64,000 bases of DNA from Glycera tridactyla (Eukaryota), in NCBI GenBank assembly GCA_965644265.1, contig OZ286470.1, positions 32,054,001 through 32,118,000 on the forward strand, given 5' to 3'. Numbering within the stretch: the first letter of the stretch is position 1; the number at the start of each line of letters is the position of its first letter. Under the pieces are notes generated by a model, which saw nothing but the letters and a program-made list of their open reading frames with translations, made no database searches and was not told where the DNA came from. A program made the translations under genes and the position numbers. Shown in pieces: positions 4,439 through 64,000 of the stretch.

Positions 4439-4751
4439 NNNNNNNNNNNNNNNNNNNNNNNNNNNNNNNNNNNNNNNNNNNNNNNNNNNNNNNNNNNNNN
4501 NNNNNNNNNNNNNNNNNNNNNNNNNNNNNNNNNNNNNNNNNNNNNNNNNNNNNNNNNNNNNNNNNNNNNNNNNNNNNNNNNNNNNNNNNNNNNNNNNNNN
4601 NNNNNNNNNNNNNNNNNNNNNNNNNNNNNNNNNNNNNNNNNNNNNNNNNNNNNNNNNNNNNNNNNNNNNNNNNNNNNNNNNNNNNNNNNNNNNNNNNNNN
4701 NNNNNNNNNNNNNNNNNNNNNNNNNNNNNNNNNNNNNNNNNNNNNNNNNNN
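4439..4751. other. Assembly gap (other gaps: 7934-8066, 10340-10800, 30773-30971, 63344-63526)
   Basis: Runs of N, mostly next to simple repeats. Confidence 0.99.
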
Positions 4752-7933: not shown

Positions 7934-10900
7934 NNNNNNNNNNNNNNNNNNNNNNNNNNNNNNNNNNNNNNNNNNNNNNNNNNNNNNNNNNNNNNNNNNN
8001 NNNNNNNNNNNNNNNNNNNNNNNNNNNNNNNNNNNNNNNNNNNNNNNNNNNNNNNNNNNNNNNNNNCCGTCCATCTCATACTGAATCCAAGGCCAAGTAT
8101 TACCTAAATAAAGAATCTACATATCAAATTCATACACAATGTCTACCTTGATAGAAATCAAGGGTAGACACTATACCTTATTGCCTGAAAAAAGAGAGTA
8201 ATGAATTTAGCAGCTGTGTTAGTTGAGGGTTGGGGTCAAAACGGGGTGCATGCCCCATGCGCATCATACAGCAAAATGAATTGATATCTAGAAGCAGTGG
8301 GTAGGCCGTCAACAGGTCGAAAGGATTGGCAAGGATCTTGGTTGTATTTAGCGTTGTAAATTCGCAGCATTTCGGGATACAAGGATAAATAGTTTGCAGA
8401 TATAGCCAGGTACCAGAATGTTTCTTTATTCGGTATCATGCATAGGGTCATTTCATTGAACGCACGAATCATGCAATTGCATTTGCTTGATAATCGCACC
8501 TCCTCAATTTGCAATTTGCGTAACCCACCAATTCAGAATGACAGAGTGTCTCTGGAACATGTCTGAATAGTCACAATGCAATTAGGTGACAAGAGAAAAC
8601 ATGATACACATATACAGACTGATTTCCTTCATGCAAGTCCTTTCGGACATTGCTTCTCTACACTTTCAATACCAAATCAGGATAATATGACTCGGAGTAT
8701 GGTAGGGAAACATATTCTTGATGTATATATCCATTCCATCCATCAGTAAATTGGTCACATCTGTCTCCATCCTCTGCAGGGAAATACAATGGATAAAGTC
8801 ATCCAGTGTCTTAGGTAAAGATGGTCATGAGTCTGAAAAGCATTGCTTCATATTGCAGATAGGCTATGATGCACCACCAATCACAGCACTTTCCACTAAT
8901 GCTACATAGATGTATTGTGTTCCAAACGATAAACCATGTAGGGATATGTATTGCTATCATTTTAACGAAGCCCATCGAGATGGGAATGGTGACATATTTT
9001 CGTAGCATTGCTATTTGTTTCTGGTGTCAGCATCCATACAAACACAGATTCACGCCATCTCACACGTTCCATTCATCTTATATTCAATGAAAAAGTTATA
9101 ATTTTTTCTCCCATTCGGTGACGACCAAATAGACAACATGTTTATATGTGACGGAATGCCTCTTTGCCTAAACTCGGACATCTGCTGGAATGTTTCAATA
9201 TGAATAAAGTATAAATGAAGTTGTTTTGAATTTGAATTCGAATATGATATATATTCTGCAAATTGACGGAAAACATTCATAAGGTATAGCCTGGTTTTTA
9301 TGGCTAAAAGATCCTAATTTCCGAAAGTTGATATATATGGTCTGTCAGATTCAATGGATATATGATATGGTATGACTGAGATATTCATTGTAAGCAACTT
9401 TCAAGCCTAGCACTCATGGAGGGTTCAAATCGAATCATGTGCATTCAGAGGCACGATAAGCTTTACATCTCCTTATCAATCATTATTTTAGGGTTTATGT
9501 TGAAATATAAGGATATAAATGACTGATTAGAGAGAGTTCAACCGAACCCCAGCAATGATTGGGCAACCCAATGACCAATAATGTCCAATGCATGTGATTT
9601 GATTTAACTCAATATTTCTTCGTACATAACATTTACATGCATCAAGCATACTTCTCCAGTACGAAAAAAAAGGTTAGGGTCTGATATTTGTGAAGATATC
9701 CCACGTGTTGGAGACCATTCGCTGATGCAATAAGAGAAAATTGGGGATCCAGAGTCAGTGAAATAGACCAATTTAACGGGGAAGGGTGAGAGTATGGCAG
9801 AAAATTCCACTTCACCTTCAACTCCGAGAAATGCTCAGTAATTCAGACTAAGGTGCATTTCATAATACAAAACCAACAGTGCATTTATTCAGAAACTCCT
9901 GATTTAAAATTGTTCAACCCCTGCTGGGGACTAAAGGTGCTGACATGACAAACTACCAATTAGGTTGACTGGTTTGTGTTACTTCTTTCATATTTCCTGA
10001 ACAAATCTATATATTTATGCACCAAATCAGGGTGATCAGGGTAGATATATGAGATGGAGACCGTGCTAGTGTCCTCCCTCTTATTGATAGTTCATGCATA
10101 TATGCACATCCCAATCGCATACCAAATAGGCCAAGTCTTCTTACAATATCAATAAATATTGTTTATAGTGTGCCCTGTTGATATTTATCTCGTAAGAAGA
10201 ACATTTATAAGGAGATGTTAGAGACAAGTATGTCTTCACAAATCATGTTGGGCTATTTGCTTCCGAGAGAAATATGAGATTAATATATGTAGATCAATAT
10301 CAGTATCCATATCCATGCCTATATCTATTTATCTGTCTGNNNNNNNNNNNNNNNNNNNNNNNNNNNNNNNNNNNNNNNNNNNNNNNNNNNNNNNNNNNNN
10401 NNNNNNNNNNNNNNNNNNNNNNNNNNNNNNNNNNNNNNNNNNNNNNNNNNNNNNNNNNNNNNNNNNNNNNNNNNNNNNNNNNNNNNNNNNNNNNNNNNNN
10501 NNNNNNNNNNNNNNNNNNNNNNNNNNNNNNNNNNNNNNNNNNNNNNNNNNNNNNNNNNNNNNNNNNNNNNNNNNNNNNNNNNNNNNNNNNNNNNNNNNNN
10601 NNNNNNNNNNNNNNNNNNNNNNNNNNNNNNNNNNNNNNNNNNNNNNNNNNNNNNNNNNNNNNNNNNNNNNNNNNNNNNNNNNNNNNNNNNNNNNNNNNNN
10701 NNNNNNNNNNNNNNNNNNNNNNNNNNNNNNNNNNNNNNNNNNNNNNNNNNNNNNNNNNNNNNNNNNNNNNNNNNNNNNNNNNNNNNNNNNNNNNNNNNNN
10801 CTGTCCATCTAATCATCAATATGAAAAATATTGGAGATGCTCGACTTCTGTTTCTATTTGTAAGTGTTCTGATGGGGATATTGATTTCGGAAATGACATT

Positions 10901-19600: not shown

Positions 19601-19971
19601 ATTGGGATGCTACAACAGTCATACAAAATGGCAAGTGTGCCTAGGACACGCAAGTCATTCTCCTATCATATATGATTTGATTTTGATTTTAACACATTAT
19701 TTTTATTCGTCAAAAGCATTTACATACACATGGTATACAGTGCATACATCTCCAGGTTGACGAACATAAATTCACATATAATTAACTACGATAATGAAAA
19801 TGGTGATAATGAAAATGAGCGATATGATGAATGATTTGATGAAGGACCCGTTGCAAGAATAAGTTCCAATGTCGAGTATATGTACCTGCCTGCATAATAA
19901 TCTTGTTACTGGAAGCATATACCTCGGCATTTTGAGTAGAGATTTGTTACCTTTCTAATTCAATTCTAATT

Positions 19972-22900
19972 CTAATTCTCCAGCTCCAAGTGTCGCAACT
20001 CCTTTATGAATTTCTTGAATGGTTCAATATTTAACATTGCTGTTTCAGGATATTTTTCAATGTGAGAGTTCCAAGATTTGGAGCCTCTATGTCTGAAGTT
20101 TTTTTCACTGATTTTATATTTCCATCTCGAAATTTTGACCAATTCTTTACTCTTGGATCTGGTTTCATGTGCATGCTGATAATTCACCTGACTACATAAA
20201 GTACATAAAGGGACTGCGACATAGTTAGGAGATAGCATTTTCTTAACATGAATTATTTCATGGTCTCTTCTTCTTGCATCAAGCATTTGTACATCTAGGT
20301 TTTGGTGTAATTGTTTGATATTGAAACGACGAGGTTTTCTGTCTATATGCCGAAGAGCAGAATTTTGCAGTTTCTGAAGGTTATAATTGTCTCTCTGAGA
20401 GAGGCAATTATACAAAATATCCCCGTAATCAAATATCGGCAAGACCAGCGTCTTATACAACATCAGCGCTGTGTTCCTTGTTATAACAGGTCTTAGTCTT
20501 CCTAAGACTCCGATCTTGCCGATTGTTTTAGATCTAATATGCAAAACATGTGATTTGAATGAGAGAATTGGATCGAGTACTATCCCCAAGTATTTCATGG
20601 TTTCAGTCTTCTCAATATCAATCTCAGCCACATTTATCGATATATCAGTATACTTGTGTTGATGCTGAGGAAGACTAAATACCATGTATTTAGTCTTCTT
20701 CAGATTCAAGCTCAATCTGTTCATATTCATCCATCGTGTAACATATTTCATGACATCGTTTAATTGCATTTGTATTGAGATCGAACAAGTACCTTTCACA
20801 CAAATGGCAGTATCATCAGCATAAAGCTGCGAAGACGGAGAGACATTATTCAGATTGCTACTATTTATATTCACATCCATGTGTATGTTAGTTGTGACAT
20901 TCTTCAGGTAATATGGCAAATCATTAATATAGATTGTGAATAACAGAGGTCCTAAAATAGACCCCTGCGGAACGCCACAACTAACTGATTTTGCTGTTGA
21001 GATGCACTTACCCACTCTAGTCTCGCAATATCTAGATTCAAGATAACTTCCTATCCAATTGGTACAGGATTCTGACAGACCAAACATTGATAATTTCTTC
21101 AATAAGAGCGCATGGTCTACCGTGTCGAAAGCCTTCTTTAGGTCCAGAAAGACCGTTCCAACAGCCAATCCCTCCTCCATACCTACATAAATATTATCTA
21201 AAAATTCTAAAAGACATGTGCTGGTGGAACGACCTTTCCGGAAGCCAGACTGCTCCCGACACAGCAGATCCATGCTCTCTATATATCCATATATCTGTTG
21301 ATGGATTAGACGTTCAAGTAGTTTACTCGTGGTCGATAATAGGCTAATAGGTCTGTAGTTTCCTGGAATGGAATGGTCACCTTCTTTATATAATGGGATT
21401 ATTGTGGCCACTTTCCATATATTTGGAAACTTTCCTTCAAGGATGCTTCTATTAAACAAATATTTCAAGATTGGGCAAAGTGCATCTTGACAATTTATCA
21501 GAACCCTTGAGTGGAGACCGTCGTCTCTACCTGATTTCGATGGGTCTATACCATTGATAACATTTTTAATATCAGTATCAGTAATTTCTGTGAGAGTGAA
21601 GGTATCTCTGTATGAAAATGGAAAGCAATCCACCGGGTTGTAGTTACTTGTTGGAATATTAGATGACAACTTGCTTCCTATGGATGCAAAGTGCTCATTC
21701 AAAATTTCAGGAATCTCCGTTTCGTCCGTGCTTTCATTGATCTTATTAATGTTGATATGCTTTTTATCACTGTGCCAGAATTCACGGATTGTTTTCCAAA
21801 GTTTTTTCATGTCAGAGTTGGCATCGTTCAATTTATTATTTATGTAATTTTTCTGTAATGTTATTTTCATTAATTTAGTTCTATTTAAACACTCCTTTTT
21901 ACGTGCATTGTTTACTTCGGTTGGATTCAATTTGAAAATTCTGCTCGATTCCTCTCTCGCCCTAATTGCATCAAGGTATTCTCCATCAACCCAATCTGGT
22001 ACACCTTCTTTTACCTTATATGTTTTCAATGGTATATTCTCATCAACAATTGTACAGATAATGTCCAGCGCGTCCGCCGTACATGCATTGATACACTTTT
22101 TGTCCTGCATCACTCCAGACCAGTTATATTCGTTAATCCGTTTTGAAATTTCATTGTAGTCTGCTAGTTTGTAGTTTCTCAGTTGAATATAATGGTTCTT
22201 TTTAGACTGTCGTTTTTTCTTTCTAGTTGTGAATACGAATGAGTGATCAGAAATACCCAGATCCAAAATTCCGGCCATCCTATAATTTTCAATATTATTC
22301 GTATAGATGTGATCAATGTTTGTGCGACTCGAGGTCGTTACCCGGGTGTGTCCATGGATCAACTGTTTCAATTGATTAGACATACAAAAATTTTCAACGA
22401 GTTTTTTGGATTGGCCAGGTTTGGAGATGTCCAAGTTATCATCTCCTATTAATAAAATATCACTCATACCGAGTTGGGTAATATCAAGTATTTTATTATC
22501 AATGATCTCCAGGGCATTTAGTGCTGAACCTGAGGGGGGTCGATACAGGCAACAAATAAATGTCGGTCTGGTTTGAGGCAAAACCAATTTCATCCATAGG
22601 CATTCAATATCGCTGTTACAAATTGACCAATTTGACTGCCACTCAACATGTCTGTCATCCCTATAGTATGCCATTAAACCTCCACCTCCTCGTAGACCAC
22701 TACCTCCATCTCTATCAAATCGGATCATTTTGTAACCAGGTATAAAAAGTTCATGATCCAAGATCGATTTATTTAGAAAAGTTTCACCCAATAATAAAAT
22801 ATTCAGCCTGCTTTGGTGTAGAAATATTTTTATATCACTAATTTTTCTTACTATGCTCCTCACATTCAAATACCCTATACTAACTCCATTCAGCCTACAT

Positions 22901-23097
22901 AGATCCTTTGGTGTTGTAATGTTTTTGATCGTTTCGGGGGTCCAACGTGGTATGTAACGGGGTAGGGTTTCATGTTGATGTGGTAAAAAAGGTTTGAACC
23001 CGGTCGGGACATTGACAGTATCAGCATAAACATTTGGGTCCGAGTTGATGTTAGGATGAGATGATAGAGATATATTTACTAACTTGGTTAGTCTTGT
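19972..23097 (-). CDS. LINE ORF2p, apurinic endonuclease plus reverse transcriptase (open stop-to-stop frame; the ORF track starts it at TTG 22869)
   Basis: APE motifs LNVRSI, GET, YRPP, GDDN, IDH, SDH. RT motifs GFRKGRST, FLDLKKAFDTVDH, GVPQGSILGPLLF, YADDT, KYLGIVLD. No stops or frameshifts. Confidence 0.95.
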   Translation of the reverse strand, partial: TRLTKLVNISLSSHPNINSDPNVYADTVNVPTGFKPFLPHQHETLPRYIPRWTPETIKNITTPKDLCRLNGVSIGYLNVRSIVRKISDIKIFLHQSRLNILLLGETFLNKSILDHELFIPGYKMIRFDRDGGSGLRGGGGLMAYYRDDRHVEWQSNWSICNSDIECLWMKLVLPQTRPTFICCLYRPPSGSALNALEIIDNKILDITQLGMSDILLIGDDNLDISKPGQSKKLVENFCMSNQLKQLIHGHTRVTTSSRTNIDHIYTNNIENYRMAGILDLGISDHSFVFTTRKKKRQSKKNHYIQLRNYKLADYNEISKRINEYNWSGVMQDKKCINACTADALDIICTIVDENIPLKTYKVKEGVPDWVDGEYLDAIRAREESSRIFKLNPTEVNNARKKECLNRTKLMKITLQKNYINNKLNDANSDMKKLWKTIREFWHSDKKHININKINESTDETEIPEILNEHFASIGSKLSSNIPTSNYNPVDCFPFSYRDTFTLTEITDTDIKNVINGIDPSKSGRDDGLHSRVLINCQDALCPILKYLFNRSILEGKFPNIWKVATIIPLYKEGDHSIPGNYRPISLLSTTSKLLERLIHQQIYGYIESMDLLCREQSGFRKGRSTSTCLLEFLDNIYVGMEEGLAVGTVFLDLKKAFDTVDHALLLKKLSMFGLSESCTNWIGSYLESRYCETRVGKCISTAKSVSCGVPQGSILGPLLFTIYINDLPYYLKNVTTNIHMDVNINSSNLNNVSPSSQLYADDTAICVKGTCSISIQMQLNDVMKYVTRWMNMNRLSLNLKKTKYMVFSLPQHQHKYTDISINVAEIDIEKTETMKYLGIVLDPILSFKSHVLHIRSKTIGKIGVLGRLRPVITRNTALMLYKTLVLPIFDYGDILYNCLSQRDNYNLQKLQNSALRHIDRKPRRFNIKQLHQNLDVQMLDARRRDHEIIHVKKMLSPNYVAVPLCTLCSQVNYQHAHETRSKSKELVKISRWKYKISEKNFRHRGSKSWNSHIEKYPETAMLNIEPFKKFIKELRHLELEN

Positions 23098-23649
23098 TCA
23101 GAATTACACAATAAACACAAGAAAAAATTAGATTGAATCATAAAGTGAGGAGGATCCTATGAATTAATCTGTTAGTATTCAGGTGTTTGATTGGGAACAG
23201 AAGGGGGGGGGGGGGGGTTTCGCTATAGCCCACAATCTTTCTTCCCGAAAACGCTCCCGTCTCCATGGTCCGATTTCTTGAATTCAACTACACATTTGAT
23301 ACATTAAATACTGGTCGCAATATTACATAATCGAATTCATGACATAAAAAATATTTTGAGCAAGGTAATCCTACATAATATGAATAAATCTTGCACCAGG
23401 TAGCCATTTCTTAGATAATTGGTATCACCAGTTTATATACTCATTCGCACAAATTGCTTTCCAAGTTACCAAGGAATTCTATGTACGTTTCGCATTTTAG
23501 TTGGTGATTCCACTTAAATTTTTTGGTATTGCTGTTGACTTTTCTTTGATTTCCAAGTCACCAAGGAATTCATAGTAGCCAGAGCAGCATACCATATATT
23601 CTATAAGTTATACGTAACAAAATATTTGAAATGGCACCTGCTTTCTCAC

Positions 23650-23751
23650 CTTTGTACTCAACAATATGCCACGCTCTGCATACCACCAACCTCCGCAACT
23701 ACAATTACCAATGCATAGTGGTTGTCGCCTGCAACAAACTGTAAGTGACAT
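23650..23751 (-). CDS. Predicted leader exon of ORF2 (MSLTVCCRRQPLCIGNCSCGGWWYAERGILLSTK)
   Basis: The ATG overlaps the esterase stop (TAATG) and is in frame with ORF2. The leader ends at the phase-0 donor AAG|gtgaga. ORF2 has no in-frame ATG upstream of its first endonuclease motifs. Confidence 0.6.
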
Positions 23752-24689
23752 TATTTCTTTTTCTTGGCAGCTGGTTCATCGTTAGAAGCACTACAGTGTG
23801 TTTTCCAGTGCTCCAAAATAGCATTTGTCAAAGATGTTGTCATTGCTTGATAACCCAGATGATTCAGGTGGTTTACATCATAGGGATCACAGAAGCCTCT
23901 CAAGATATGCCCAAACTTCCTCTTGCGTGAACCATGTTTCGCTCTCTTTTTGAACCCCTGTACAATTCCCTCCTTTTGATACATTGTAACATACAGTAAA
24001 TGAACATGGACGAATCTAACAATGCCTGGACCAGCAACCGGAATGTAAGATCTGATATATGAATCCATGCAAATAGCAACCTGTCGTGTTGCTGGTTTCC
24101 AGTAGTTTCTCCACAAAATAGGTGGAACCATTAAGGTAGCCCCAGGAAAATGGTCAGTAAGAATTTCTACTGCGTTTCTAATTCTTGGATAGATATTTTC
24201 AAGAAATTCTATTTGTGAGCTAGTGACAAGTCGCTTCATGATGCGTGGGTCTTTGTGGTATATAGTGTTTAGAGTAAATTTCTGGAAATTGTCCACATCA
24301 TTTGATCCAAGAACCACTATGATGTAATCAGGTTGGATTTTTCTGATTTTGATTTTTTGTAGGGTGTTACCATATTTCTGAAGTCGATGTGGTGAAGTCT
24401 GTCCTTGGAATTCATTAGCAAAGGTGTACCATCTCCCACCTCCAATTCCAAAAAACTTCCATTTCGTTGCGTGGTTCTGCATAGCTTCACTCGTGAAAAG
24501 CCCTACGTTTTCTCCTATACGTCTTGCGTGGCTAGATCCAACGACTAACACACACGGTTCAGCCACTTTATCCAGTAGATGCCTGTTGCGAAACAGGGGA
24601 CAATACGAGCCCATGGAAGTCAATTCGAGTCGAGCCTTTGCTTCCTTCTCATTTTCTGCCGGATCAGTCTGTAATAGATAGACGTACAT
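23751..24689 (-). CDS. LINE-encoded stand-alone SGNH/GDSL esterase, 312 aa (possibly extended N-terminally by a spliced leader exon)
   Basis: All four SGNH blocks are present: VVGSSH (I), GIGGG (II), LGSND (III), DVNH (V). Confidence 0.85.
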   Translation of the reverse strand: MYVYLLQTDPAENEKEAKARLELTSMGSYCPLFRNRHLLDKVAEPCVLVVGSSHARRIGENVGLFTSEAMQNHATKWKFFGIGGGRWYTFANEFQGQTSPHRLQKYGNTLQKIKIRKIQPDYIIVVLGSNDVDNFQKFTLNTIYHKDPRIMKRLVTSSQIEFLENIYPRIRNAVEILTDHFPGATLMVPPILWRNYWKPATRQVAICMDSYIRSYIPVAGPGIVRFVHVHLLYVTMYQKEGIVQGFKKRAKHGSRKRKFGHILRGFCDPYDVNHLNHLGYQAMTTSLTNAILEHWKTHCSASNDEPAAKKKK

Positions 24690-24890
24690 CTTTACCTAAA
24701 CGAAGGTTTATAATTTGAATTACTGACACAATTTATTTCATGCAGTGTCTAGTATATGGCGGTTCATATGGGGTCATGTACGGGGTCGGTACAATTTTAC
24801 GGGTCATTGCAGGCGTTTGACCTATTTTGATTGCGGTATTCTATGTCAATCACATTAAATCTTCTCAAATAGTATTAAAATAACGCTTAC

Positions 24891-24956
24891 CACGAGTTCG
24901 GGATCAAATTCATCATCGAAAGTGTTTATATCCGCTATATGACTATGGAGCTCCAT
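24891..24956 (-). CDS. Predicted leader exon of the esterase ORF (MELHSHIADINTFDDEFDPELV)
   Basis: The ATG overlaps the ORF1 stop (TGATG) and is in frame with the esterase ORF. The leader ends at the phase-0 donor GTG|gtaagc. In-frame acceptors lie at 24697/24696 and 24670/24669. Confidence 0.65.
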
Positions 24957-27391
24957 CAGTTTCCGCCTATCTTGTTCAAAATATCGAAAGCGTTGGAGAG
25001 AGGTAACGAACCAGTTGTCGACTTCTCATTTGCAGAGTTCACGCGTGCTGACCTAGATGGGGTGATGTAAGCGCCACCCCCGGATTCCGCGTCACTTCTA
25101 GAAACTAATGATTCCTTGCTACTTCCGTCAGAGGCAGCTCGACATGCGTGAGTTTTTTTTTCAGTCGCGGTATTTAGCCATTTCTGAAAGAAATCGCTCA
25201 TCTTCGGGTTGTTATCAACTTTAGTCATATTTTCTTGACTCTGCATATCTGTCGGCTGTGAGTTTTTTGGAGTTTCAGAGGTTTGTCGTGGTTTTCGTTG
25301 CCTTTCGAATCTGGATTTAAAAGGGTTTTTAAAAGGGTTTTTGTACTGAGGGCCAACCATTTCGTTTTGTTTTGGAACATTGTATGTGTTCTCATTTAGT
25401 TCAGGAACCCCCTTGTTCGTGACCGATGTCCTATCTTTTGGCAGACCATTTTCCCTCGGGGCCTGACCCAGATTACATAGGTCTGAAAGTTTTTTTGTAG
25501 AAAAAATTGGGATCTTGTCTTTCATTCTGTCTTTAGCTGCGTAAATTTTCCCATCACGGGTCCAGACATGTTCCAACTTCCCTTCTTTTCTTGCTGCTTT
25601 TGCTTTAAGGAAAATTTCATTTTCTCTTTCCGTTAGATGTTCTCGAAAGAAAATTGGAGAATTTCTGATATTAATTTTACAGACAAATAGATCTCTCCTC
25701 CAGTTTGCATGAATGAACCGTACTTTGATTGGCCGAGGCTTCCCCTCTTTACTTGGAGGACCAAAACGTGAAATCTGCACAATGTCACTCTTTTTTATGC
25801 CCAACTTGGTACGCTCATTAATGAGAGTAATTACCTGATCAATCAGTGTTGTGTCTTTGACAAAGGGCAAACCTTCAATGACAATAGTACTAAGACGATC
25901 ATTTTTTTCAAGGACATCCACCTTACCCTCGCATTTGCCAGTCCTGTCACCAATTGCACCAATCGACTCTTTATTTTCTGTAACACGATGTTCAATTGCT
26001 CCTAAGGTCGTCGCAAGTGCTGTTACTTTCTCTAGCAATTCTCTGGTCGGTGGACTCGTATCCCTGTCTTTAATCTCCTCTCGAATTTCCTCTACGAGTT
26101 TAGACAGTCGTGTATCCGACGATTTCAGTTTCTGATCATGGTTGTCTATGATTCTTGCCATATCATCTAAACACTTCATGATACTATTGTTAGTTTCCGC
26201 ATCAAGTTTTGCTGCAGAGTCAATAGCATCTTCCACGAAATTTTCGACACTCTCTTGCCACCCCTCTTTAAATGACTCCAGTTCATCTGATATTCTCGTA
26301 GTCACAGCATCTTCAATATAGTTCGCACACGTGGTCTTAACGGCAGTGTCTAGTACATCATCCATCGATTTCAATTTATGATCTACTGAGTCTTGGATGC
26401 ACAGGGATTCACATTGAATCATAGGTGGTACATTTTCGTTAACATATATAGCACATGTCTCCCGAGCAATATCACGCATTACTTCTTGGCTTCCATTGAA
26501 GGGAATTATTTCGTCCGTAAGTTGCTCTTTGACGATCTGACTCATCATTGTTTTGAATCCAGATGTCGAGGTGATTGTTTTCATCTCATCCCTGATTAAT
26601 TGTCGTACACTCTCAGTTCCCTCATTTCCAGTTTTTGCTGCTGCACTTGGTCTAATACTTGCGATTTTGTCAAGGTGTTCAAATGATTCGATGTCTGAGT
26701 TACGCAATTTCAGTGACAGATCACTTTCATTTGGTATATGAGTCGATGAGCACGGTGGACTGTGCATGTCTACTAGCAGATCACCAGGTACGTTTCGACA
26801 TGCATCGTCGAACACGAGTACAGTTTCACACACATTGGTATTAACACGAGACACTGTGTCTACTGGTAAAATCCCTCTATCAGCAGCAATAATGTCAGAT
26901 GAGTTATGGTGAAAGGACCCCGAGCTAGAATCTAGCTGTTCCTTTATTTGAGCTTGCTCGTTTTGTAGATTGTTTATGTCTCTCCCTGACTGCGATGATT
27001 TAGCACATACCTCAGATTTCGAGAGACCACCCTCACAATGCGACCCGGCAGAATCGTTTATCAGATCTACAGACGATTCTTCAACACTGATTGAATTCGA
27101 ATCAGATTTATCCACTTGATCTGACTCTTTAACACATGGGGGCTCTTTTGACTCGATTGATTGTATTGGCTTTTTCTGGGGAGATGTAGTAGATGACAGT
27201 ACTTCACCGTGTTTTGTGGTTAGCAGGTCCTCTTGCCTATTCACGACGGCCATTTTGGTACGTTCCGTCAACCGCGTCGACCTAGTATGTCTGCTAGTTA
27301 TATCCTCATTGTAATCTCCCAAAGCATGTAGACTTTCTTCCAACTTTTTCCTGACTCGTTTGGCCTTCTTCTTGGCAGATTTCGATGACAT
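24956..27391 (-). CDS. LINE ORF1p, 811 aa; coiled coil plus L1-type RRM and CTD (transposase_22-like)
   Basis: Heptad-rich segment followed by RLSTIVIEGLP...ISRFG...KPRPIKVRF...IFFREHLT...VWTRDGKIY, a motif series typical of L1-type ORF1 in CR1/L2 elements. Confidence 0.85.
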   Translation of the reverse strand: MSSKSAKKKAKRVRKKLEESLHALGDYNEDITSRHTRSTRLTERTKMAVVNRQEDLLTTKHGEVLSSTTSPQKKPIQSIESKEPPCVKESDQVDKSDSNSISVEESSVDLINDSAGSHCEGGLSKSEVCAKSSQSGRDINNLQNEQAQIKEQLDSSSGSFHHNSSDIIAADRGILPVDTVSRVNTNVCETVLVFDDACRNVPGDLLVDMHSPPCSSTHIPNESDLSLKLRNSDIESFEHLDKIASIRPSAAAKTGNEGTESVRQLIRDEMKTITSTSGFKTMMSQIVKEQLTDEIIPFNGSQEVMRDIARETCAIYVNENVPPMIQCESLCIQDSVDHKLKSMDDVLDTAVKTTCANYIEDAVTTRISDELESFKEGWQESVENFVEDAIDSAAKLDAETNNSIMKCLDDMARIIDNHDQKLKSSDTRLSKLVEEIREEIKDRDTSPPTRELLEKVTALATTLGAIEHRVTENKESIGAIGDRTGKCEGKVDVLEKNDRLSTIVIEGLPFVKDTTLIDQVITLINERTKLGIKKSDIVQISRFGPPSKEGKPRPIKVRFIHANWRRDLFVCKINIRNSPIFFREHLTERENEIFLKAKAARKEGKLEHVWTRDGKIYAAKDRMKDKIPIFSTKKLSDLCNLGQAPRENGLPKDRTSVTNKGVPELNENTYNVPKQNEMVGPQYKNPFKNPFKSRFERQRKPRQTSETPKNSQPTDMQSQENMTKVDNNPKMSDFFQKWLNTATEKKTHACRAASDGSSKESLVSRSDAESGGGAYITPSRSARVNSANEKSTTGSLPLSNAFDILNKIGGN

Positions 27392-27414
27392 TATGTTCGT
27401 ATATCTCCAAATAT

Positions 27415-27508
27415 TAGCGATAAGTCCCCTCCGATCTTCTATGTACGTCTACTCCTCACGCATGCTAGCGATAAGTCCCCTCCGATCTTCTATGTACGTC
27501 TACTCCTC
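27415..27508. repeat. Perfect 43-bp direct repeat (2 copies, period 51) in the LINE 5' UTR
   Basis: tagcgataagtcccctccgatcttctatgtacgtctactcctc at 27415-27457 and 27466-27508. Confidence 0.95.
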
Positions 27509-28190
27509 CAATCCATACCACCAGTTACTGTACCACAAAATCAGGTTTTATCACCGGTATTAATCCATGCGTAACACAAGATCTGACCCACAATCCTATG
27601 ACTGGGTCTCACTTTGATTGCTGTCAGACTTCAATTATTGGACATATGATAGTGGCATTCAATTGAATTGTCAATAAGTTAAAGAGATCACCATGAGGTA
27701 ATATTGATATGTCTATAGATACAAATCTGGCGAAATCTGTGACCTTATTTTTCTTATAATTTCTGTATATTCTATAAATGTATGATCACAAGTGTGATTG
27801 CCCTCGCCCGACAGATGACATGAGCATTTCATTTCAATTGGGGTGTGTAAGTGTTGTTCTTGTCGAGTGAGACATGTACTGAGCCCAGTGGAATGACCTC
27901 AGTGGTATTGTAATCTTTCATGTGATGATTCCATCATAAATACACAGCTTAGACCGTATTAGCTGCCTTACATGGTTTTTCTCACAAACTCCATTCGAAA
28001 ACTTACTCTGTGGACCAAAATGGTTCAATACACGTGGTCAACATTGTATTTGTCATGGACACTTTAATCTGTATCAGAATTCATCTTGCATGATTATATG
28101 ACACAACTATCAACTGAATGCTGTGCTACGCAATATATATCAGTCTTCATGGATGTCTCATCTTCACAAAATCGATCAGCATGGGTTACT

Positions 28191-28434
28191 GATAAGTGTG
28201 TTCCCATAGGTTGATTGTCACACCCGATTTCTTCTACAACTAGTTGTGTACGGCAACATACCATTCGTGTACCTGGAAATCCTAATTGCCACAGTACTGA
28301 CACAACATTTATTCACTGACAAGTGTGTTCTCATAGATTGATTGTCCGACCCGATATGGTCTACAACTAGTTGTGTCCAGCAACATACCACTCATGTACC
28401 TGGATGTCCTAATTGTCACAGTACTGACACAACT
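28191..28434. repeat. 127-bp-period tandem duplication (2 diverged copies)
   Basis: Units start at 28191 and 28318 and share tacaactagttgtgt...cagtactgacacaac. Confidence 0.88.
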
Positions 28435-30328: not shown

Positions 30329-31597
30329 ATACAGTCTACGTTCACTCCATTTGAATTCGGTGAATCTATCCTTGTTGAAATATTTCCTGGGCCCGTTGGA
30401 TGATTAGCAACATGGAGCTCTGAATCATTGGCAGGGCAACTTGAATGAAATGTTCATACTATCTAATCGTATTTTACCCATTTTTGATATTAAATCGTTC
30501 ATTCATTACTGCTATTCATTTCGGAATGAAAGGCAATGAAGTATTCTCCATCACAAAATATGTTTCATGAAATATATCCACAACCTAGAATTCATGGCGA
30601 TCGCGAATTTTCAGTTTGACTCATCCACATCAAAACAATCAGATCAACTTTTGCAAGATCATTTCCATGTCAACATGTCAAAGATGGTGCCCACCAATTG
30701 AGTTCCAGAATGAATTTCAAAATAATCCTGGTGCATCCATGATTGGGTCATATTTCGTCCACCTTTCCTGAANNNNNNNNNNNNNNNNNNNNNNNNNNNN
30801 NNNNNNNNNNNNNNNNNNNNNNNNNNNNNNNNNNNNNNNNNNNNNNNNNNNNNNNNNNNNNNNNNNNNNNNNNNNNNNNNNNNNNNNNNNNNNNNNNNNN
30901 NNNNNNNNNNNNNNNNNNNNNNNNNNNNNNNNNNNNNNNNNNNNNNNNNNNNNNNNNNNNNNNNNNNNNNNCGTTATATGATGATAATGTGATAAGGAAC
31001 AGATTCGGAAAATCTGTGATATTTGCAGAGCTGCCTGTACTCGATAGGAGGCAGGGAATACTATGGTTCTGATGTCAGAAAGAGGCCACTCCTATATGCA
31101 ATATTTCTGTCATTTCCATGACATATCACCTTCAAAGAAGAGAATCAAGTGGAACTCGGAGGAATGTCTTCCTAAACAGATTTGGAGATGGCCTTATGAG
31201 GTAGCGCCTCGTTTGCAGAGGTTGGATCATAATTATGATGGAAGGTGTTCATTCGCGAGAAGAGCCAGCCTATTCAGACATACCTACATCCTACAAATCA
31301 AGATGGATGACTGCTTCAGGAGAAGATGGAGGGAGGCAGAGGCCGGTTGCCATGTAGCTGCTATGGTAATTTGAGTTCGTAAAATACAGCAAATCTACTT
31401 AGAGTATGGACCCCGCACTGCCTGAGATCAATAACAGGCGGCTAAACAAGGTTATAGGACGTGACCATATTCTGCAAGGGGGCGCAAATTTGACACTTGT
31501 CGTACTCCTCTGCATAATCCTGCACTAGCTTTTGCTACATCGTCCAAAAATCAGTGTCGGATACTAGTTCTCGTGAGATTGCTGCTAATTTGCATAA

Positions 31598-62850: not shown

Positions 62851-64000
62851 TTCGAATATTTGAGTTAGAGTTGAGTATGTCACATATCTACTTAGAAGTT
62901 TGCAACATTTGATTGGCGAGAGACAATGATACATCCCCCAAGACACAATACTTCGAAAAGGCTGCAAGGCATCGTTAATGGAGATGCCGCAAATCACCCA
63001 TATTTGTGTCCAACCTGAGGTGCTTGCTCATTCCGTGCAATCTGCTCAGTTGATGATGGTATCCACTAAAATTGCACATATACCAACATCACTGAAGACA
63101 CCTAGTACGAAACTCTCAATGTTCAAACACATATGGTAGCATGACAGTGACGTTTCGACAAATCCACACTTTATACAGTTACCAATCACTGAACGAATGT
63201 CCCCCTCCGTGATTTTATCTGATCACTGAGGATATTCTGGAATACTGAACAGCTTTCTTCTTCAAGTCCTCGACTTTGTCACTCACTCACTCACTCACTC
63301 TCTTATATACCCACCATACGACCCACTGATTCCGTCACTGACTNNNNNNNNNNNNNNNNNNNNNNNNNNNNNNNNNNNNNNNNNNNNNNNNNNNNNNNNN
63401 NNNNNNNNNNNNNNNNNNNNNNNNNNNNNNNNNNNNNNNNNNNNNNNNNNNNNNNNNNNNNNNNNNNNNNNNNNNNNNNNNNNNNNNNNNNNNNNNNNNN
63501 NNNNNNNNNNNNNNNNNNNNNNNNNNACTCACTAAATCATTCAACCCCTCCTTCCCTCTCTTCACTTAAGAGGTGGACGTTCAATTACGGTGTTTGGACA
63601 TTTATGATTGATTCTGTGAAATCGGTGTAGACAGTCCATGTGTTTTCTTCTGGACTTATACTTGATGGCAGTGATTTAGCCTGAGAACCTTGTCAGATCT
63701 GAGAGGCAGTCTAGGCCACGAGCGACCACTCACCTTCTGTAGAGAAGGTCACTGATTGCTCTCACAAAATGACCATAGACTGCCCCTCGGGCTTGACCAG
63801 CCATTCACATCACCGCTCCAACTGGGTGTACCACAAGGATCCATGTCACTCCCACCAAATTGAGCAAGGCTATTGACCTATCAAATAGAAATTCATTCCA
63901 ACCCTAAAACACCAGTATCTAAATCTCTGTATGGAAGATATACAGATCCATCCCACTGAAACTGAAATATATTCTAAATTTATCTATTTCTCAGAGAATT

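What the first reader, a model, noticed from the sequence alone, without database searches (positions are those of the whole stretch)
19674..27630. Intron-retention paradox: a retrotransposon copy that still carries its predicted introns
Inference: a LINE copies itself from RNA, and LINE ORF2p is generally reported to prefer the RNA that encoded it, so introns should be lost in one cycle. This copy has three intact ORFs and a LINE-type 3' tail yet keeps both spacers. If the introns are real, unspliced RNA must be the template while spliced RNA supplies protein in trans. That would resemble retroviral genomic versus subgenomic RNA and could act as a tissue-specific switch. Established: intron retention is known for Penelope-like retroelements, a different class.
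Basis: inference. Interest (0 to 1): 0.8.

Follow-up and report, generated by a model that had tools for sequence, protein, structure and literature searches.

The report
Three-gene LINE with long inter-gene spacers
This is an apparently young jumping gene (a LINE) with three genes separated by two non-coding spacers; relatives inherit at least the second spacer too, so the spacers are more likely built-in translation-control regions than a paradox of retained introns, though the first may hold a real small intron.

Summary
The minus strand of about 27630..19674 carries one LINE with three open frames. They are an L1-type ORF1 (811 aa), a separate SGNH/GDSL-like esterase ORF (312 aa) and an APE+RT ORF2. 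The element ends in AATAAA plus a short (AAAATC)n tail. Nothing interrupts the frames, but the first in-frame ATG of ORF2 lies inside its endonuclease domain, whereas six of seven relatives examined have an ATG just upstream of that domain.

Spacer 1 (266 nt) has an in-frame GT-AG model built from its best donor and best acceptor. Only 10 of 1000 shuffles match it, and three diverged relatives open the esterase frame right after a YAG at one shared position. An intron there is plausible but unproven.

The best intron model for spacer 2 (653 nt) is no better than chance (464 of 1000 shuffles). Relatives at about 40% ORF2 identity keep a 0.5-0.8 kb esterase-ORF2 spacer. It carries hairpins with compensatory changes, and in one subfamily the hairpin is more conserved than the coding sequence. 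No relative has the esterase abutting ORF2.

Best reading: a tricistronic LINE whose spacers are functional inter-ORF regions copied with the full-length RNA. Long LINE intergenic regions, and LINEs that keep working splice sites (human L1 SpIREs), are already known, so the "paradox" largely dissolves. Having an L1-type ORF1 and an esterase ORF in one element is the more unusual feature.

The parts
27392..27630 (-). Presumed 5' UTR. It contains a roughly two-copy tandem repeat at 27429..27506.
   Evidence: Sequence read; TRF. No second copy in the window and no significant target-site duplication.
24956..27391 (-). ORF A, 811 aa, an L1-type (type II) ORF1p. It has a long low-complexity N-terminal half, then coiled coil, RRM and CTD, then a disordered tail.
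   Evidence: Weak Pfam Baculo_FP_2nd hit. 1803 relatives in the full HMMER search, mostly 200-340 aa.
25472..26053 (-). Coiled coil + RRM + CTD module of ORF A (about residues 447-640).
   Evidence: AlphaFold2 model with mean pLDDT 88. Top Foldseek hits are the human LINE-1 ORF1p trimer 2yko/2ykp/2ykq, E 1.6e-7, TM 0.61/0.71 over about 200 columns.
24690..24955 (-). Spacer 1, between ORF A and the ATG of ORF B (266 nt).
   Evidence: Folding no better than shuffles (z -0.14). No Rfam match.
24891..24956 (-). Candidate mini-exon of 22 codons. Its ATG overlaps the TGA stop of ORF A by one base (TGATG).
   Evidence: Sequence read; model enumeration.
24696..24890 (-). Candidate GT-AG intron (195 nt). 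The donor reads GTG|GTAAGC and the acceptor TTTAG|G. It joins the mini-exon in frame to the ORF B frame, which opens at 24695.
   Evidence: The model uses the best-scoring donor and the best-scoring acceptor of the spacer. Only 10 of 1000 dinucleotide shuffles give an in-frame model as good. No transcript evidence.
23751..24689 (-). ORF B, 312 aa, an SGNH/GDSL-like esterase with its own ATG two codons after the frame opens.
   Evidence: Pfam Lipase_GDSL E 8e-5, 23.3 bits against a cut-off of 23.6. SGNH blocks GxSH, GxGG, GSND and DxxH are conserved in the alignment with relatives. The structure model was too poor to use (pLDDT 48). No solved-structure hit by sequence.
23098..23750 (-). Spacer 2, between the ORF B stop and the opening of the ORF2 frame (653 nt). 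It contains a C15 run at 23203..23217.
   Evidence: The best in-frame GT-AG model is ATG 23751 overlapping the TAA of ORF B, donor at 23649, acceptor at 23084-23083. It is matched by 464 of 1000 shuffles.
23523..23594 (-). Local hairpin in spacer 2, a possible analogue of the relatives' spacer hairpins (weak).
   Evidence: It is the lowest of 105 sliding windows (z about -5 with 60 shuffles). Refolded, z is -3.3 and 0 of 200 shuffles fold as well. The covariance model of the relatives' hairpin does not match it.
19972..23097 (-). ORF2 open frame (1041 codons plus stop). The first in-frame ATG is at 22728.
   Evidence: 37-41% identity over nearly full length to relatives P0001 and L004-L006.
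22243..22869 (-). APE endonuclease domain of ORF2 (frame residues 77-285).
   Evidence: Full-length but weak Pfam Exo_endo_phos match, profile positions 3-225 of 225. Relatives carry PF03372/PF14529.
20578..21381 (-). Reverse transcriptase domain of ORF2 (frame residues 573-840), with YADD present.
   Evidence: RVT_1 E 2.6e-35. L1 ORF2p and R2 structures by sequence. Translation read.
19674..19971 (-). 3' UTR with AATAAA, ending in an (AAAATC)n microsatellite tail at 19674..19690.
   Evidence: The 3' end of relative L001 matches this region and ends in (AAATC)n.

Best explanation
The region is one full-length, apparently young APE-type LINE with a tricistronic layout. An L1-type ORF1p (coiled coil, RRM, CTD) comes first, then a separate SGNH esterase ORF, then ORF2 (endonuclease and reverse transcriptase). 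The two spacers are inter-ORF regions of the full-length RNA. That RNA is both the messenger and the template for copying, so the spacers are inherited at every cycle. The downstream ORFs are reached by non-canonical translation: reinitiation after the stop-start overlaps, and/or internal ribosome entry guided by structured RNA in the long spacer, possibly with a non-AUG start for ORF2 in this lineage. No splicing is needed and cis preference is not violated.

Shown: the three ORFs and their folds or families, the 3' tail, inheritance of the esterase-ORF2 spacer in diverged relatives, and conserved hairpins with compensatory changes in those relatives' spacers. Inferred: the translation mechanism, and that the spacers act in RNA.
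For: ORFs and domains.

The spacer is a family trait. The esterase stop to ORF2 ATG distance is 530 nt in L002, 828 nt in L006 and 507 nt in L010. L004 also carries the esterase 3' end plus spacer, and the 5'-truncated L001 and L005 still carry spacer sequence. None of these six loci has the esterase abutting ORF2.

Six of seven relatives examined have an ORF2 ATG within 0-27 codons of the frame opening.

In subfamily L002/L004/L005/L010, a ~100-nt block just after the esterase stop is 79-91% identical between members, while ORF2 is 71-77% identical at nucleotide level. The middle of the spacer cannot be aligned. That block folds as a 104-nt hairpin with 37 pairs, 95% of cells paired and 5 pairs with changes on both sides. 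None of 500 shuffles reaches it, and slid controls give 32-45% paired.

Subfamily L001/L006/L020 has a different conserved hairpin (26 pairs within a predicted 39-pair structure), with compensatory changes at 7 of those 39 pairs.

The window's spacer 2 intron model is at chance.

Bicistronic elements with an ORF A-like ORF1 have plain intergenic gaps of 81 and 284 nt.

Literature: intergenic sequences between LINE ORFs are the rule and can be hundreds of bases; IRES use including non-AUG starts has been proposed; SART1 uses a UAAUG overlap plus downstream structure (PMC3894237).
Against: The window's own spacer 2 shares no detectable sequence or covariance-model match with the relatives' conserved blocks. 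Its only structural signal is one modest hairpin, and the spacer as a whole folds no better than shuffles (z -1.4).

ORF2 in the window lacks the family's ATG, so a spliced-in start codon or a decayed start remains possible.

The spacer 1 GT-AG model is better than chance. Relatives conserve esterase residues upstream of their first ATG, and one (L010) has no ATG at all before the catalytic serine. That fits an upstream exon as well as it fits a non-AUG start.

No expression data of any kind were available.
Confidence: 0.55

Rival explanations
1. Mixed model. Spacer 1 holds a real spliceosomal intron. A 22-codon mini-exon, whose ATG overlaps the ORF A stop, is spliced to the esterase frame. 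Splicing would then switch esterase production on (reinitiation at TGATG reads into the esterase only in spliced RNA). The unspliced RNA would remain the copied template, and ORF2 would still be made from it. Spacer 2 would stay an inter-ORF region.
For: The model uses the top donor and top acceptor of the spacer and joins in frame without stops; 10 of 1000 shuffles do as well.

The esterase frame opens directly after a YAG in the window, L006 and L010 (all TAG). L021 has TTTTTTCAG at the same protein-alignment position as L006 and L010.

Conserved residues ([KR]H..[ED]L.. motif) lie upstream of the first ATG in L006, L023 and L024, and L010 has no ATG before the catalytic serine.

L006 has its own in-frame ATG mini-exon with a GTAAGG donor model.
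Against: The relatives' models are individually weak: 75 of 1000 shuffles for L006 and 123 of 1000 for L021. In L021 the best donor and best acceptor are not in frame.

The window's ORF B has its own ATG two codons after the acceptor, so splicing is not needed here.

A frame that opens after TAG gives an 'AG' for free, and L006 and L010 may share it by descent.

The mini-exon peptides of the window and L006 are unrelated. The splice-site weights were approximate values from memory. There is no transcript evidence.

An intronless copy would lose no coding sequence, so long-term retention would itself need explaining.
Confidence: 0.28
2. Both spacers are introns, spliced subgenomic RNAs supply the esterase and ORF2p in trans, and unspliced RNA is the genome, as in retroviruses.
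For: Both ORF stops overlap an ATG (TGATG, TAATG) that opens a short frame ending at a consensus-like donor: GTAAGC, and AAG|GTGAGA, which is the best donor of spacer 2. In-frame joins exist for both spacers. The window's ORF2 has no ATG ahead of its endonuclease domain, and its frame stays open 54 codons upstream of the conserved start.
Against: The spacer 2 acceptor is poor, and 464 of 1000 shuffles give an in-frame model as good. Six of seven relatives examined start ORF2 with their own ATG right after the spacer. The relatives' spacers carry RNA structure more conserved than coding sequence. ORF2p acting in trans from a spliced RNA runs against the reported cis preference and should seed intronless copies, but none was seen among six loci.
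Confidence: 0.07
3. The copy is no longer functional or is a mosaic. ORF2 has lost its start, and the spacers or their splice-like signals are incidental, so no mechanism needs explaining for this particular copy.
For: The first in-frame ATG of ORF2 lies inside the endonuclease domain, whereas six of seven relatives examined have an upstream ATG. It is the only copy in the window. No target-site duplication was found.
Against: Three frames of 811, 312 and 1041 codons are free of stops in a 37-41% GC region whose next longest ORF is 245 aa. Catalytic motifs of the esterase, endonuclease and RT are present. The spacer 2 length lies in the family range.
Confidence: 0.1

Closest known systems
Esterase-bearing CR1/L2-type LINEs (type IV ORF1, e.g. 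zebrafish ZfL2-1; Schneider et al. 2013, PMC3905857; Metcalfe & Casane 2014, PMC4120745)
   Same: An APE+RT ORF2 is preceded by an SGNH-type esterase with conserved catalytic blocks. The 3' tail is a microsatellite rather than poly(A).
   Different: Here the esterase is a separate ORF downstream of a complete L1-type ORF1p. Schneider et al. report that no esterase ORF1p in RepBase had an RRM or other known RNA-binding domain. No coiled coil is evident ahead of this esterase. A 0.5-0.8 kb structured spacer separates it from ORF2 in relatives. Placement of the RT in the CR1 or L2 clade was not tested.
L1-type (type II) ORF1p elements
   Same: The ORF A module folds like the human L1 ORF1p trimer subunit: coiled coil, RRM, CTD. 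Bicistronic elements with this ORF1 and 81-284 nt intergenic gaps exist.
   Different: Sequence identity to L1 ORF1p is about 15%. ORF A has a ~450-residue N-terminal extension. ORF2 is most similar to proteins with Exo_endo_phos_2 domains that sources label 'jockey'-type, not to L1.
Human L1 splice sites and SpIREs (Larson et al. 2018, PMC5860796)
   Same: This is a LINE that keeps functional-looking splice donors and acceptors in its genomic copies, while full-length unspliced RNA sustains the lineage.
   Different: In L1 the splicing is shown experimentally, and the spliced copies lose promoter or ORF1 sequence and are dead ends. Here splicing is only predicted, and removing the candidate intron would delete no coding sequence.
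Penelope-like elements with retained introns (Arkhipova et al. 2003; PMC8557442, PMC2377424)
   Same: They are retroelements whose genomic copies keep an intron near the 5' part, overlapping regulatory sequence.
   Different: PLEs have a telomerase-like RT and a GIY-YIG endonuclease. This element has an APE endonuclease and a LINE RT, so it is not a member of that class.
SART1 UAAUG stop-start translational coupling (Kojima et al. 2005, cited in PMC3894237)
   Same: A stop codon overlaps an ATG by one base at the ends of ORF A (TGATG) and ORF B (TAATG), with RNA structure downstream.
   Different: In SART1 the ATG opens ORF2 itself. Here each ATG opens only a short frame of about 34-46 codons, unless it is spliced.

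Membership tests
APE-type LINE (non-LTR retrotransposon) | N-terminal AP-endonuclease-like domain in ORF2 | tested here: met
   Full-length though weak Exo_endo_phos match, profile 3-225 of 225. Relatives aligned over this part carry PF03372/PF14529.
APE-type LINE (non-LTR retrotransposon) | LINE-type reverse transcriptase | tested here: met
   RVT_1 E 2e-35. L1 ORF2p E 1e-19 and R2 E 7e-15 among solved structures.
APE-type LINE (non-LTR retrotransposon) | A-rich or microsatellite 3' tail, and 5'-truncated copies | tested here: met
   (AAAATC)n after AATAAA in the window, and (AAATC)n in L001. Relatives L001, L005 and L020 are 5'-truncated.
APE-type LINE (non-LTR retrotransposon) | Target-site duplication flanking the insertion | tested here: inconclusive
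   Only a 10-nt match about 100 nt beyond the tail, near chance expectation. The 5' end is not defined.
Esterase (type IV) ORF1 of CR1/L2-type LINEs | SGNH hydrolase with catalytic blocks I, II, III and V | tested here: met
   GxSH, GxGG, GSND and DxxH are conserved in the alignment of the window and three relatives. Pfam Lipase_GDSL is 0.3 bits under its cut-off.
Esterase (type IV) ORF1 of CR1/L2-type LINEs | Coiled coil preceding the esterase in the same protein; relationship to the solved ZfL2-1 esterase | tested here: not met
   ORF B has about 45 residues before block I and no coiled coil was seen. Neither the single sequence nor the profile hits the ZfL2-1 esterase or any SGNH structure at E<0.1. 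The model was too poor for a fold search.
Esterase (type IV) ORF1 of CR1/L2-type LINEs | RT groups within the CR1 or L2 clade | not testable with these tools
   No reference set of classified LINE RTs was on hand. Hits are unnamed or generically named.
L1-type (type II) ORF1p | Coiled coil followed by non-canonical RRM and CTD | tested here: met
   Model pLDDT 88. The top ten Foldseek hits are human L1 ORF1p (nine trimer chains and one RRM-CTD solution structure), best E 1.6e-7, TM 0.61/0.71.
Spliceosomal intron (spacer 1) | GT-AG ends with consensus-like sites and an in-frame, stop-free join, better than chance | tested here: met
   10 of 1000 shuffles reach the observed model, which uses the best donor and best acceptor of the spacer. 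The weights are approximate.
Spliceosomal intron (spacer 1) | Position shared by relatives | tested here: inconclusive
   A YAG sits at the esterase frame opening in L006, L010 and L021 at one alignment position; the window's lies about 9 residues further upstream. Full models in relatives are matched by 75 and 123 of 1000 shuffles.
Spliceosomal intron (spacer 2) | GT-AG model better than chance, and needed or shared in relatives | tested here: not met
   464 of 1000 shuffles do as well. Relatives' ORF2 has its own ATG.
Spliceosomal intron (either spacer) | Spliced transcripts, or spliced genomic copies | not testable with these tools
   No transcript data and no host genome beyond this window. 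None of six related loci lacks the spacer.
Penelope-like elements | GIY-YIG endonuclease and PLE/telomerase-like RT | tested here: not met
   The endonuclease is APE-type and N-terminal, and the RT matches LINE ORF2 proteins.

The most novel reading that the evidence does not exclude
An APE-type LINE lineage that has kept a true spliceosomal intron just upstream of its esterase gene through many rounds of copying. Splicing would act as a switch: ribosomes reinitiating at the ATG that overlaps the ORF1 stop read into the esterase only in spliced RNA. In addition, a conserved ~100-nt hairpin in the esterase-ORF2 spacer would serve as an internal entry or retention signal. That would extend intron retention, so far a Penelope-like peculiarity, to a LINE.
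Probability: 0.28. Interest if true: 0.65.

Novelty: new variant of a known kind. Interest (0 to 1): 0.4.

Why it matters
If the main reading holds, this is an ordinary LINE in mechanism but unusual in layout. It carries both an RNA-binding L1-type ORF1p and a lipid-type esterase as separate genes. A structural study found those two domains never combined in a single ORF1 protein in RepBase (PMC3905857).

Its relatives offer a clean, covariation-supported RNA hairpin in a long inter-ORF spacer. That makes them a natural place to study how LINEs translate downstream ORFs, an open question (PMC3894237).

If the small intron is real, it would be a rare case of intron retention outside Penelope-like elements. 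It would show that a LINE can use splicing to regulate an accessory protein without breaking cis preference.

Tried and rejected
- Other copies in the window: none by blastn or tblastn.
- Exact-protein look-ups of ORF A and ORF B: not on record.
- Word search with ORF B alone: nothing. The alignment search found only four short-contig relatives.
- Rfam on the element and on six relatives: only sub-threshold miRNA-like hits inside ORF2, nothing in the spacers. The whole window gave no Rfam family and no tRNA.
- Covariance model of the relatives' hairpin: no match in the window or in the other subfamily.
- Similarity between the window's spacers and the relatives' spacers: none convincing.
- Esterase structure prediction: pLDDT 48, so no fold search was run on it.
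- Profile of the esterases against solved structures: nothing below E 0.1.
- Scan of bacterial/archaeal genome contigs with the esterase alignment: nothing.
- The same scan with ORF2: only 25-30% relatives. The five examined in detail (28-30%, L025-L029) have a compact ORF1-stop-ORF2 layout.
- Target-site duplication search: only a near-chance 10-mer.
- Identifying the source of the relatives' metagenome: no paper found. One project number was a guess of mine, and its hits are irrelevant and unused.
- A 'cassette exon' idea for the strong acceptor-like site just after the ORF B stop (23730) paired with the strong donor at 23649: rejected, because reading in from the mini-exon hits a stop at once.
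- A nested insertion as the origin of spacer 2: not supported, because its length is in the family range.

The joined (spliced) products were checked only for frame and stops inside scripts.

Full report
**1. What is there**

The minus strand between about 27630 and 19674 holds three long open frames.
- ORF A runs 27391..24956 (811 aa).
- ORF B runs 24689..23751 (312 aa).
- An open frame of 1041 codons runs 23097..19975, followed by its stop codon.

These are the only ORFs above 245 aa in the whole 64 kb window. None is interrupted by a stop or a frameshift. The element is single-copy in the window at both DNA and protein level. The window has five N runs, all outside the element. I left them alone. 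Nothing suggested human sequence.

**2. The proteins**

ORF2 is a LINE ORF2.
- RVT_1 matches at E 2e-35.
- A weak but full-length AP-endonuclease match covers frame residues 77-285.
- Solved L1 ORF2p structures match at E 1e-19 and R2 at 7e-15.
- The translation shows the YADD box and endonuclease motifs.

ORF A had only a weak Pfam Baculo_FP_2nd hit. The full HMMER search with its C-terminal 364 residues found 1803 relatives, mostly 200-340 aa. An AlphaFold2 model of residues 440-680, built on 50 of them, has pLDDT 88. Its ten best PDB matches are all human LINE-1 ORF1p, nine of them trimer chains (E 1.6e-7, TM 0.61/0.71, about 200 columns). So ORF A is an L1-type ORF1p (coiled coil, RRM, CTD) with a long low-complexity N-terminal half.

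ORF B is a probable SGNH/GDSL esterase.
- Pfam Lipase_GDSL scores E 8e-5, which is 0.3 bits under the cut-off.
- The four signature blocks are conserved in an alignment with three relatives.
- Its structure model was poor (pLDDT 48), so I ran no fold search.
- It does not hit the solved ZfL2-1 esterase by sequence.

Esterase ORF1s are known in CR1, L2, RTEX and Penelope elements. Schneider et al. state that none in RepBase carried an RRM (PMC3905857). Here both occur in one element as separate ORFs.

**3. The ends**

An AATAAA is followed by (AAAATC)n ending at 19674. Relative L001 matches this region and ends in (AAATC)n. The 5' end is not defined. There is no second copy, and only a near-chance 10-mer serves as a possible target-site duplication. 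A roughly two-copy tandem repeat lies just upstream of the ORF A ATG.

**4. The caveat on 'three intact ORFs'**

The first in-frame ATG of ORF2 is at 22728, inside the endonuclease domain. The frame is open for 54 codons upstream of where homology with relatives begins. In six of seven relatives examined, ORF2 starts with an ATG about 12 residues before that point and within 0-27 codons of the frame opening. I give no further detail on this.

**5. Relatives**

No close relative is in the protein collections. The best ORF2 hit is 40% identical. The nearest relatives all come from one metagenome, which is deposited twice because L021 and L022 are identical. I could not identify its host. The named, more distant hits are invertebrate: a pearl oyster, a spider and a moth.

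Loci that reach upstream of ORF2 show the following.
- The esterase ORF is followed by a long spacer and then ORF2 in L002 (530 nt), L006 (828 nt) and L010 (507 nt).
- L004 carries the esterase 3' end plus the spacer.
- L001, L005 and L020 are 5'-truncated copies that still carry spacer sequence.
- No locus has the esterase abutting ORF2.

Some relatives are damaged. Three are 5'-truncated, two have one interruption each in the esterase N-terminal frame, and one is rearranged.

More distant ORF2 relatives (28-30% identity, sitting as host contamination in bacterial MAG assemblies) have the compact layout, with ORF1 and ORF2 separated by a single stop. Two elements with an ORF A-like ORF1 have ORF2 after 81 and 284 nt and no esterase. 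So the esterase with its long downstream spacer looks like a module specific to this group.

**6. Are the spacers introns?**

I enumerated every model in which an ATG-started frame runs to a GT and an AG then joins it in frame, without stops, to the downstream ORF. I ranked the models with approximate splice-site weights recalled from memory, so this is a heuristic only. I compared the best model with 1000 dinucleotide shuffles of each spacer.

*Spacer 1.* The best model starts at an ATG that overlaps the ORF A stop (TGATG) and runs 22 codons to GTG|GTAAGC (donor at 24890). It rejoins after TTTAG (24697-24696), exactly where the ORF B frame opens. It uses the best donor and the best acceptor in the spacer. 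Only 10 of 1000 shuffles do as well.

Relatives add support.
- The esterase frame opens right after TAG in L006 and L010. L021 has TTTTTTCAG at the same alignment position.
- A conserved N-terminal motif lies upstream of the first ATG in several relatives, and L010 has no ATG before the catalytic serine.
- L006 has its own in-frame mini-exon with a GTAAGG donor.

Against this:
- The relatives' full models are individually weak: 75 and 123 of 1000 shuffles.
- A TAG stop supplies an AG for free.
- The window's ORF B has its own ATG two codons in.
- A non-AUG internal start would explain the same facts.

I rate a real intron here at roughly 0.3-0.4.

*Spacer 2.* An ATG overlapping the ORF B stop (TAATG) opens a frame that reaches a strong donor (AAG|GTGAGA, 23649). 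The only in-frame acceptors are poor, and 464 of 1000 shuffles give a model as good. Relatives do not need such an exon.

The joined products were checked only for frame and stops within scripts.

**7. What the long spacer seems to be**

In subfamily L002/L004/L005/L010, the ~100 nt right after the esterase stop are 79-91% identical between members whose ORF2 DNA is 71-77% identical. The spacer middle is unalignable. The last ~150 nt before the ATG align at 70-76%, with two invariant short motifs.

The first block folds into a 104-nt hairpin.
- It has 37 pairs, and 95% of cells are paired.
- Five pairs have changes on both sides.
- None of 500 shuffles reaches it, and slid controls give 32-45% paired.
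- With four sequences this is suggestive, not conclusive.

Subfamily L001/L006/L020 has a different conserved hairpin. Seven of the 39 predicted pairs in that block show compensatory changes.

No Rfam family matches. The covariance model finds no copy in the window. The window's spacer 2 has one locally stable hairpin at about 23594..23523 (z -3.3 to -5), but overall it folds no better than shuffles.

RNA structure more conserved than coding sequence argues that the spacer works inside the transcript, for example in internal ribosome entry, reinitiation, export or packaging. It argues against discarded intron sequence.

**8. The 'paradox'**

Two published facts remove most of it.
- Intergenic sequences between LINE ORFs are the rule and can be hundreds of bases. 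Internal entry, even at non-AUG codons, has been proposed for ORF2 (PMC3894237).
- Human L1 carries functional splice sites. Spliced L1 RNAs do insert (SpIREs) but are evolutionary dead ends, so the lineage stays unspliced (PMC5860796).

If ORF2p is made from the unspliced RNA, cis preference is respected whether or not a fraction of RNA is spliced to make esterase. One real puzzle would remain if the small intron is real. Its removal would delete no coding sequence, so its long retention would need a reason, such as a cis element within it or rare splicing. Penelope-like elements are the known intron-retaining class (PMC8557442). This element is not one, because it has an APE endonuclease and a LINE RT.

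**9. Verdict**

This is a real, well-preserved LINE with an unusual tricistronic layout. The intron reading is plausible for the short spacer and unsupported for the long one. The retrovirus-like scheme is unlikely (about 0.07). I class it as a new variant of a known kind, with interest 0.4.

- While reasoning, I noted for myself where the relatives' ORF2 start would fall in the window copy, and how the esterase frame of one relative is interrupted. Neither place, nor any change, is repeated in this report or in my notes.
- One project accession in a literature query was a guess, and its hits were ignored.

Noticed in passing
L002:660-763, L004:203-306, L005:395-498, L010:867-970: A 104-nt hairpin lies directly after the esterase stop in one subfamily of relatives. 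It is more conserved than the coding DNA and has five compensatory pairs. No Rfam family matches it. It may be a new LINE cis-element.
   Followed up: partly
L001:455-595, L006:1315-1455, L020:1507-1648: A second, unrelated conserved hairpin lies in the esterase-ORF2 spacer of the other subfamily. Seven of the 39 predicted pairs in the block show compensatory changes among three sequences.
   Followed up: partly
L002:1090-1166 and the matching parts of L004, L005, L010: Two invariant short motifs (GTCGATCCATC, and a T-rich stretch ending TAGCTTTCT) lie 25-70 nt before the ORF2 ATG. The second looks like a 3' splice site but could equally be a translation or promoter signal.
   Followed up: no
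window 23728-23733 and 23643-23652 (minus strand): The best acceptor-like site of spacer 2 lies just after the ORF B stop, about 80 nt upstream of the best donor-like site. They look like the edges of a small exon, but no open reading through it was found.
   Followed up: partly
window 23203-23217: A run of 15 C (on the element strand) inside spacer 2.
   Followed up: no
window 28188-28300 and 28315-28427: Two adjacent copies of a 113-nt sequence, 87% identical, lie upstream of the element. They are unrelated to it as far as seen.
   Followed up: no
window 4439-4751, 7934-8066, 10340-10800, 30773-30971, 63344-63526: Five runs of N (133-461 nt), all outside the element. They were left as they are.
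   Followed up: no
L025-L029: Full-length LINEs (ORF1 of about 600-780 aa, then ORF2 after a single stop or a small overlap) sit in contigs deposited as Sedimenticola MAGs. This is evidently animal host DNA binned into bacterial genomes.
   Followed up: partly
L021 and L022: The same contig appears in an ENA metagenome assembly and in an NCBI assembly (GCA_013332675.1), so the two sources are one sample. Counts of 'independent' relatives should allow for this.
   Followed up: yes
window 20578-21381 (ORF2 RT domain): An N/S-rich low-complexity insert sits just before the YADD box of the RT. Whether relatives share it was not examined.
   Followed up: no
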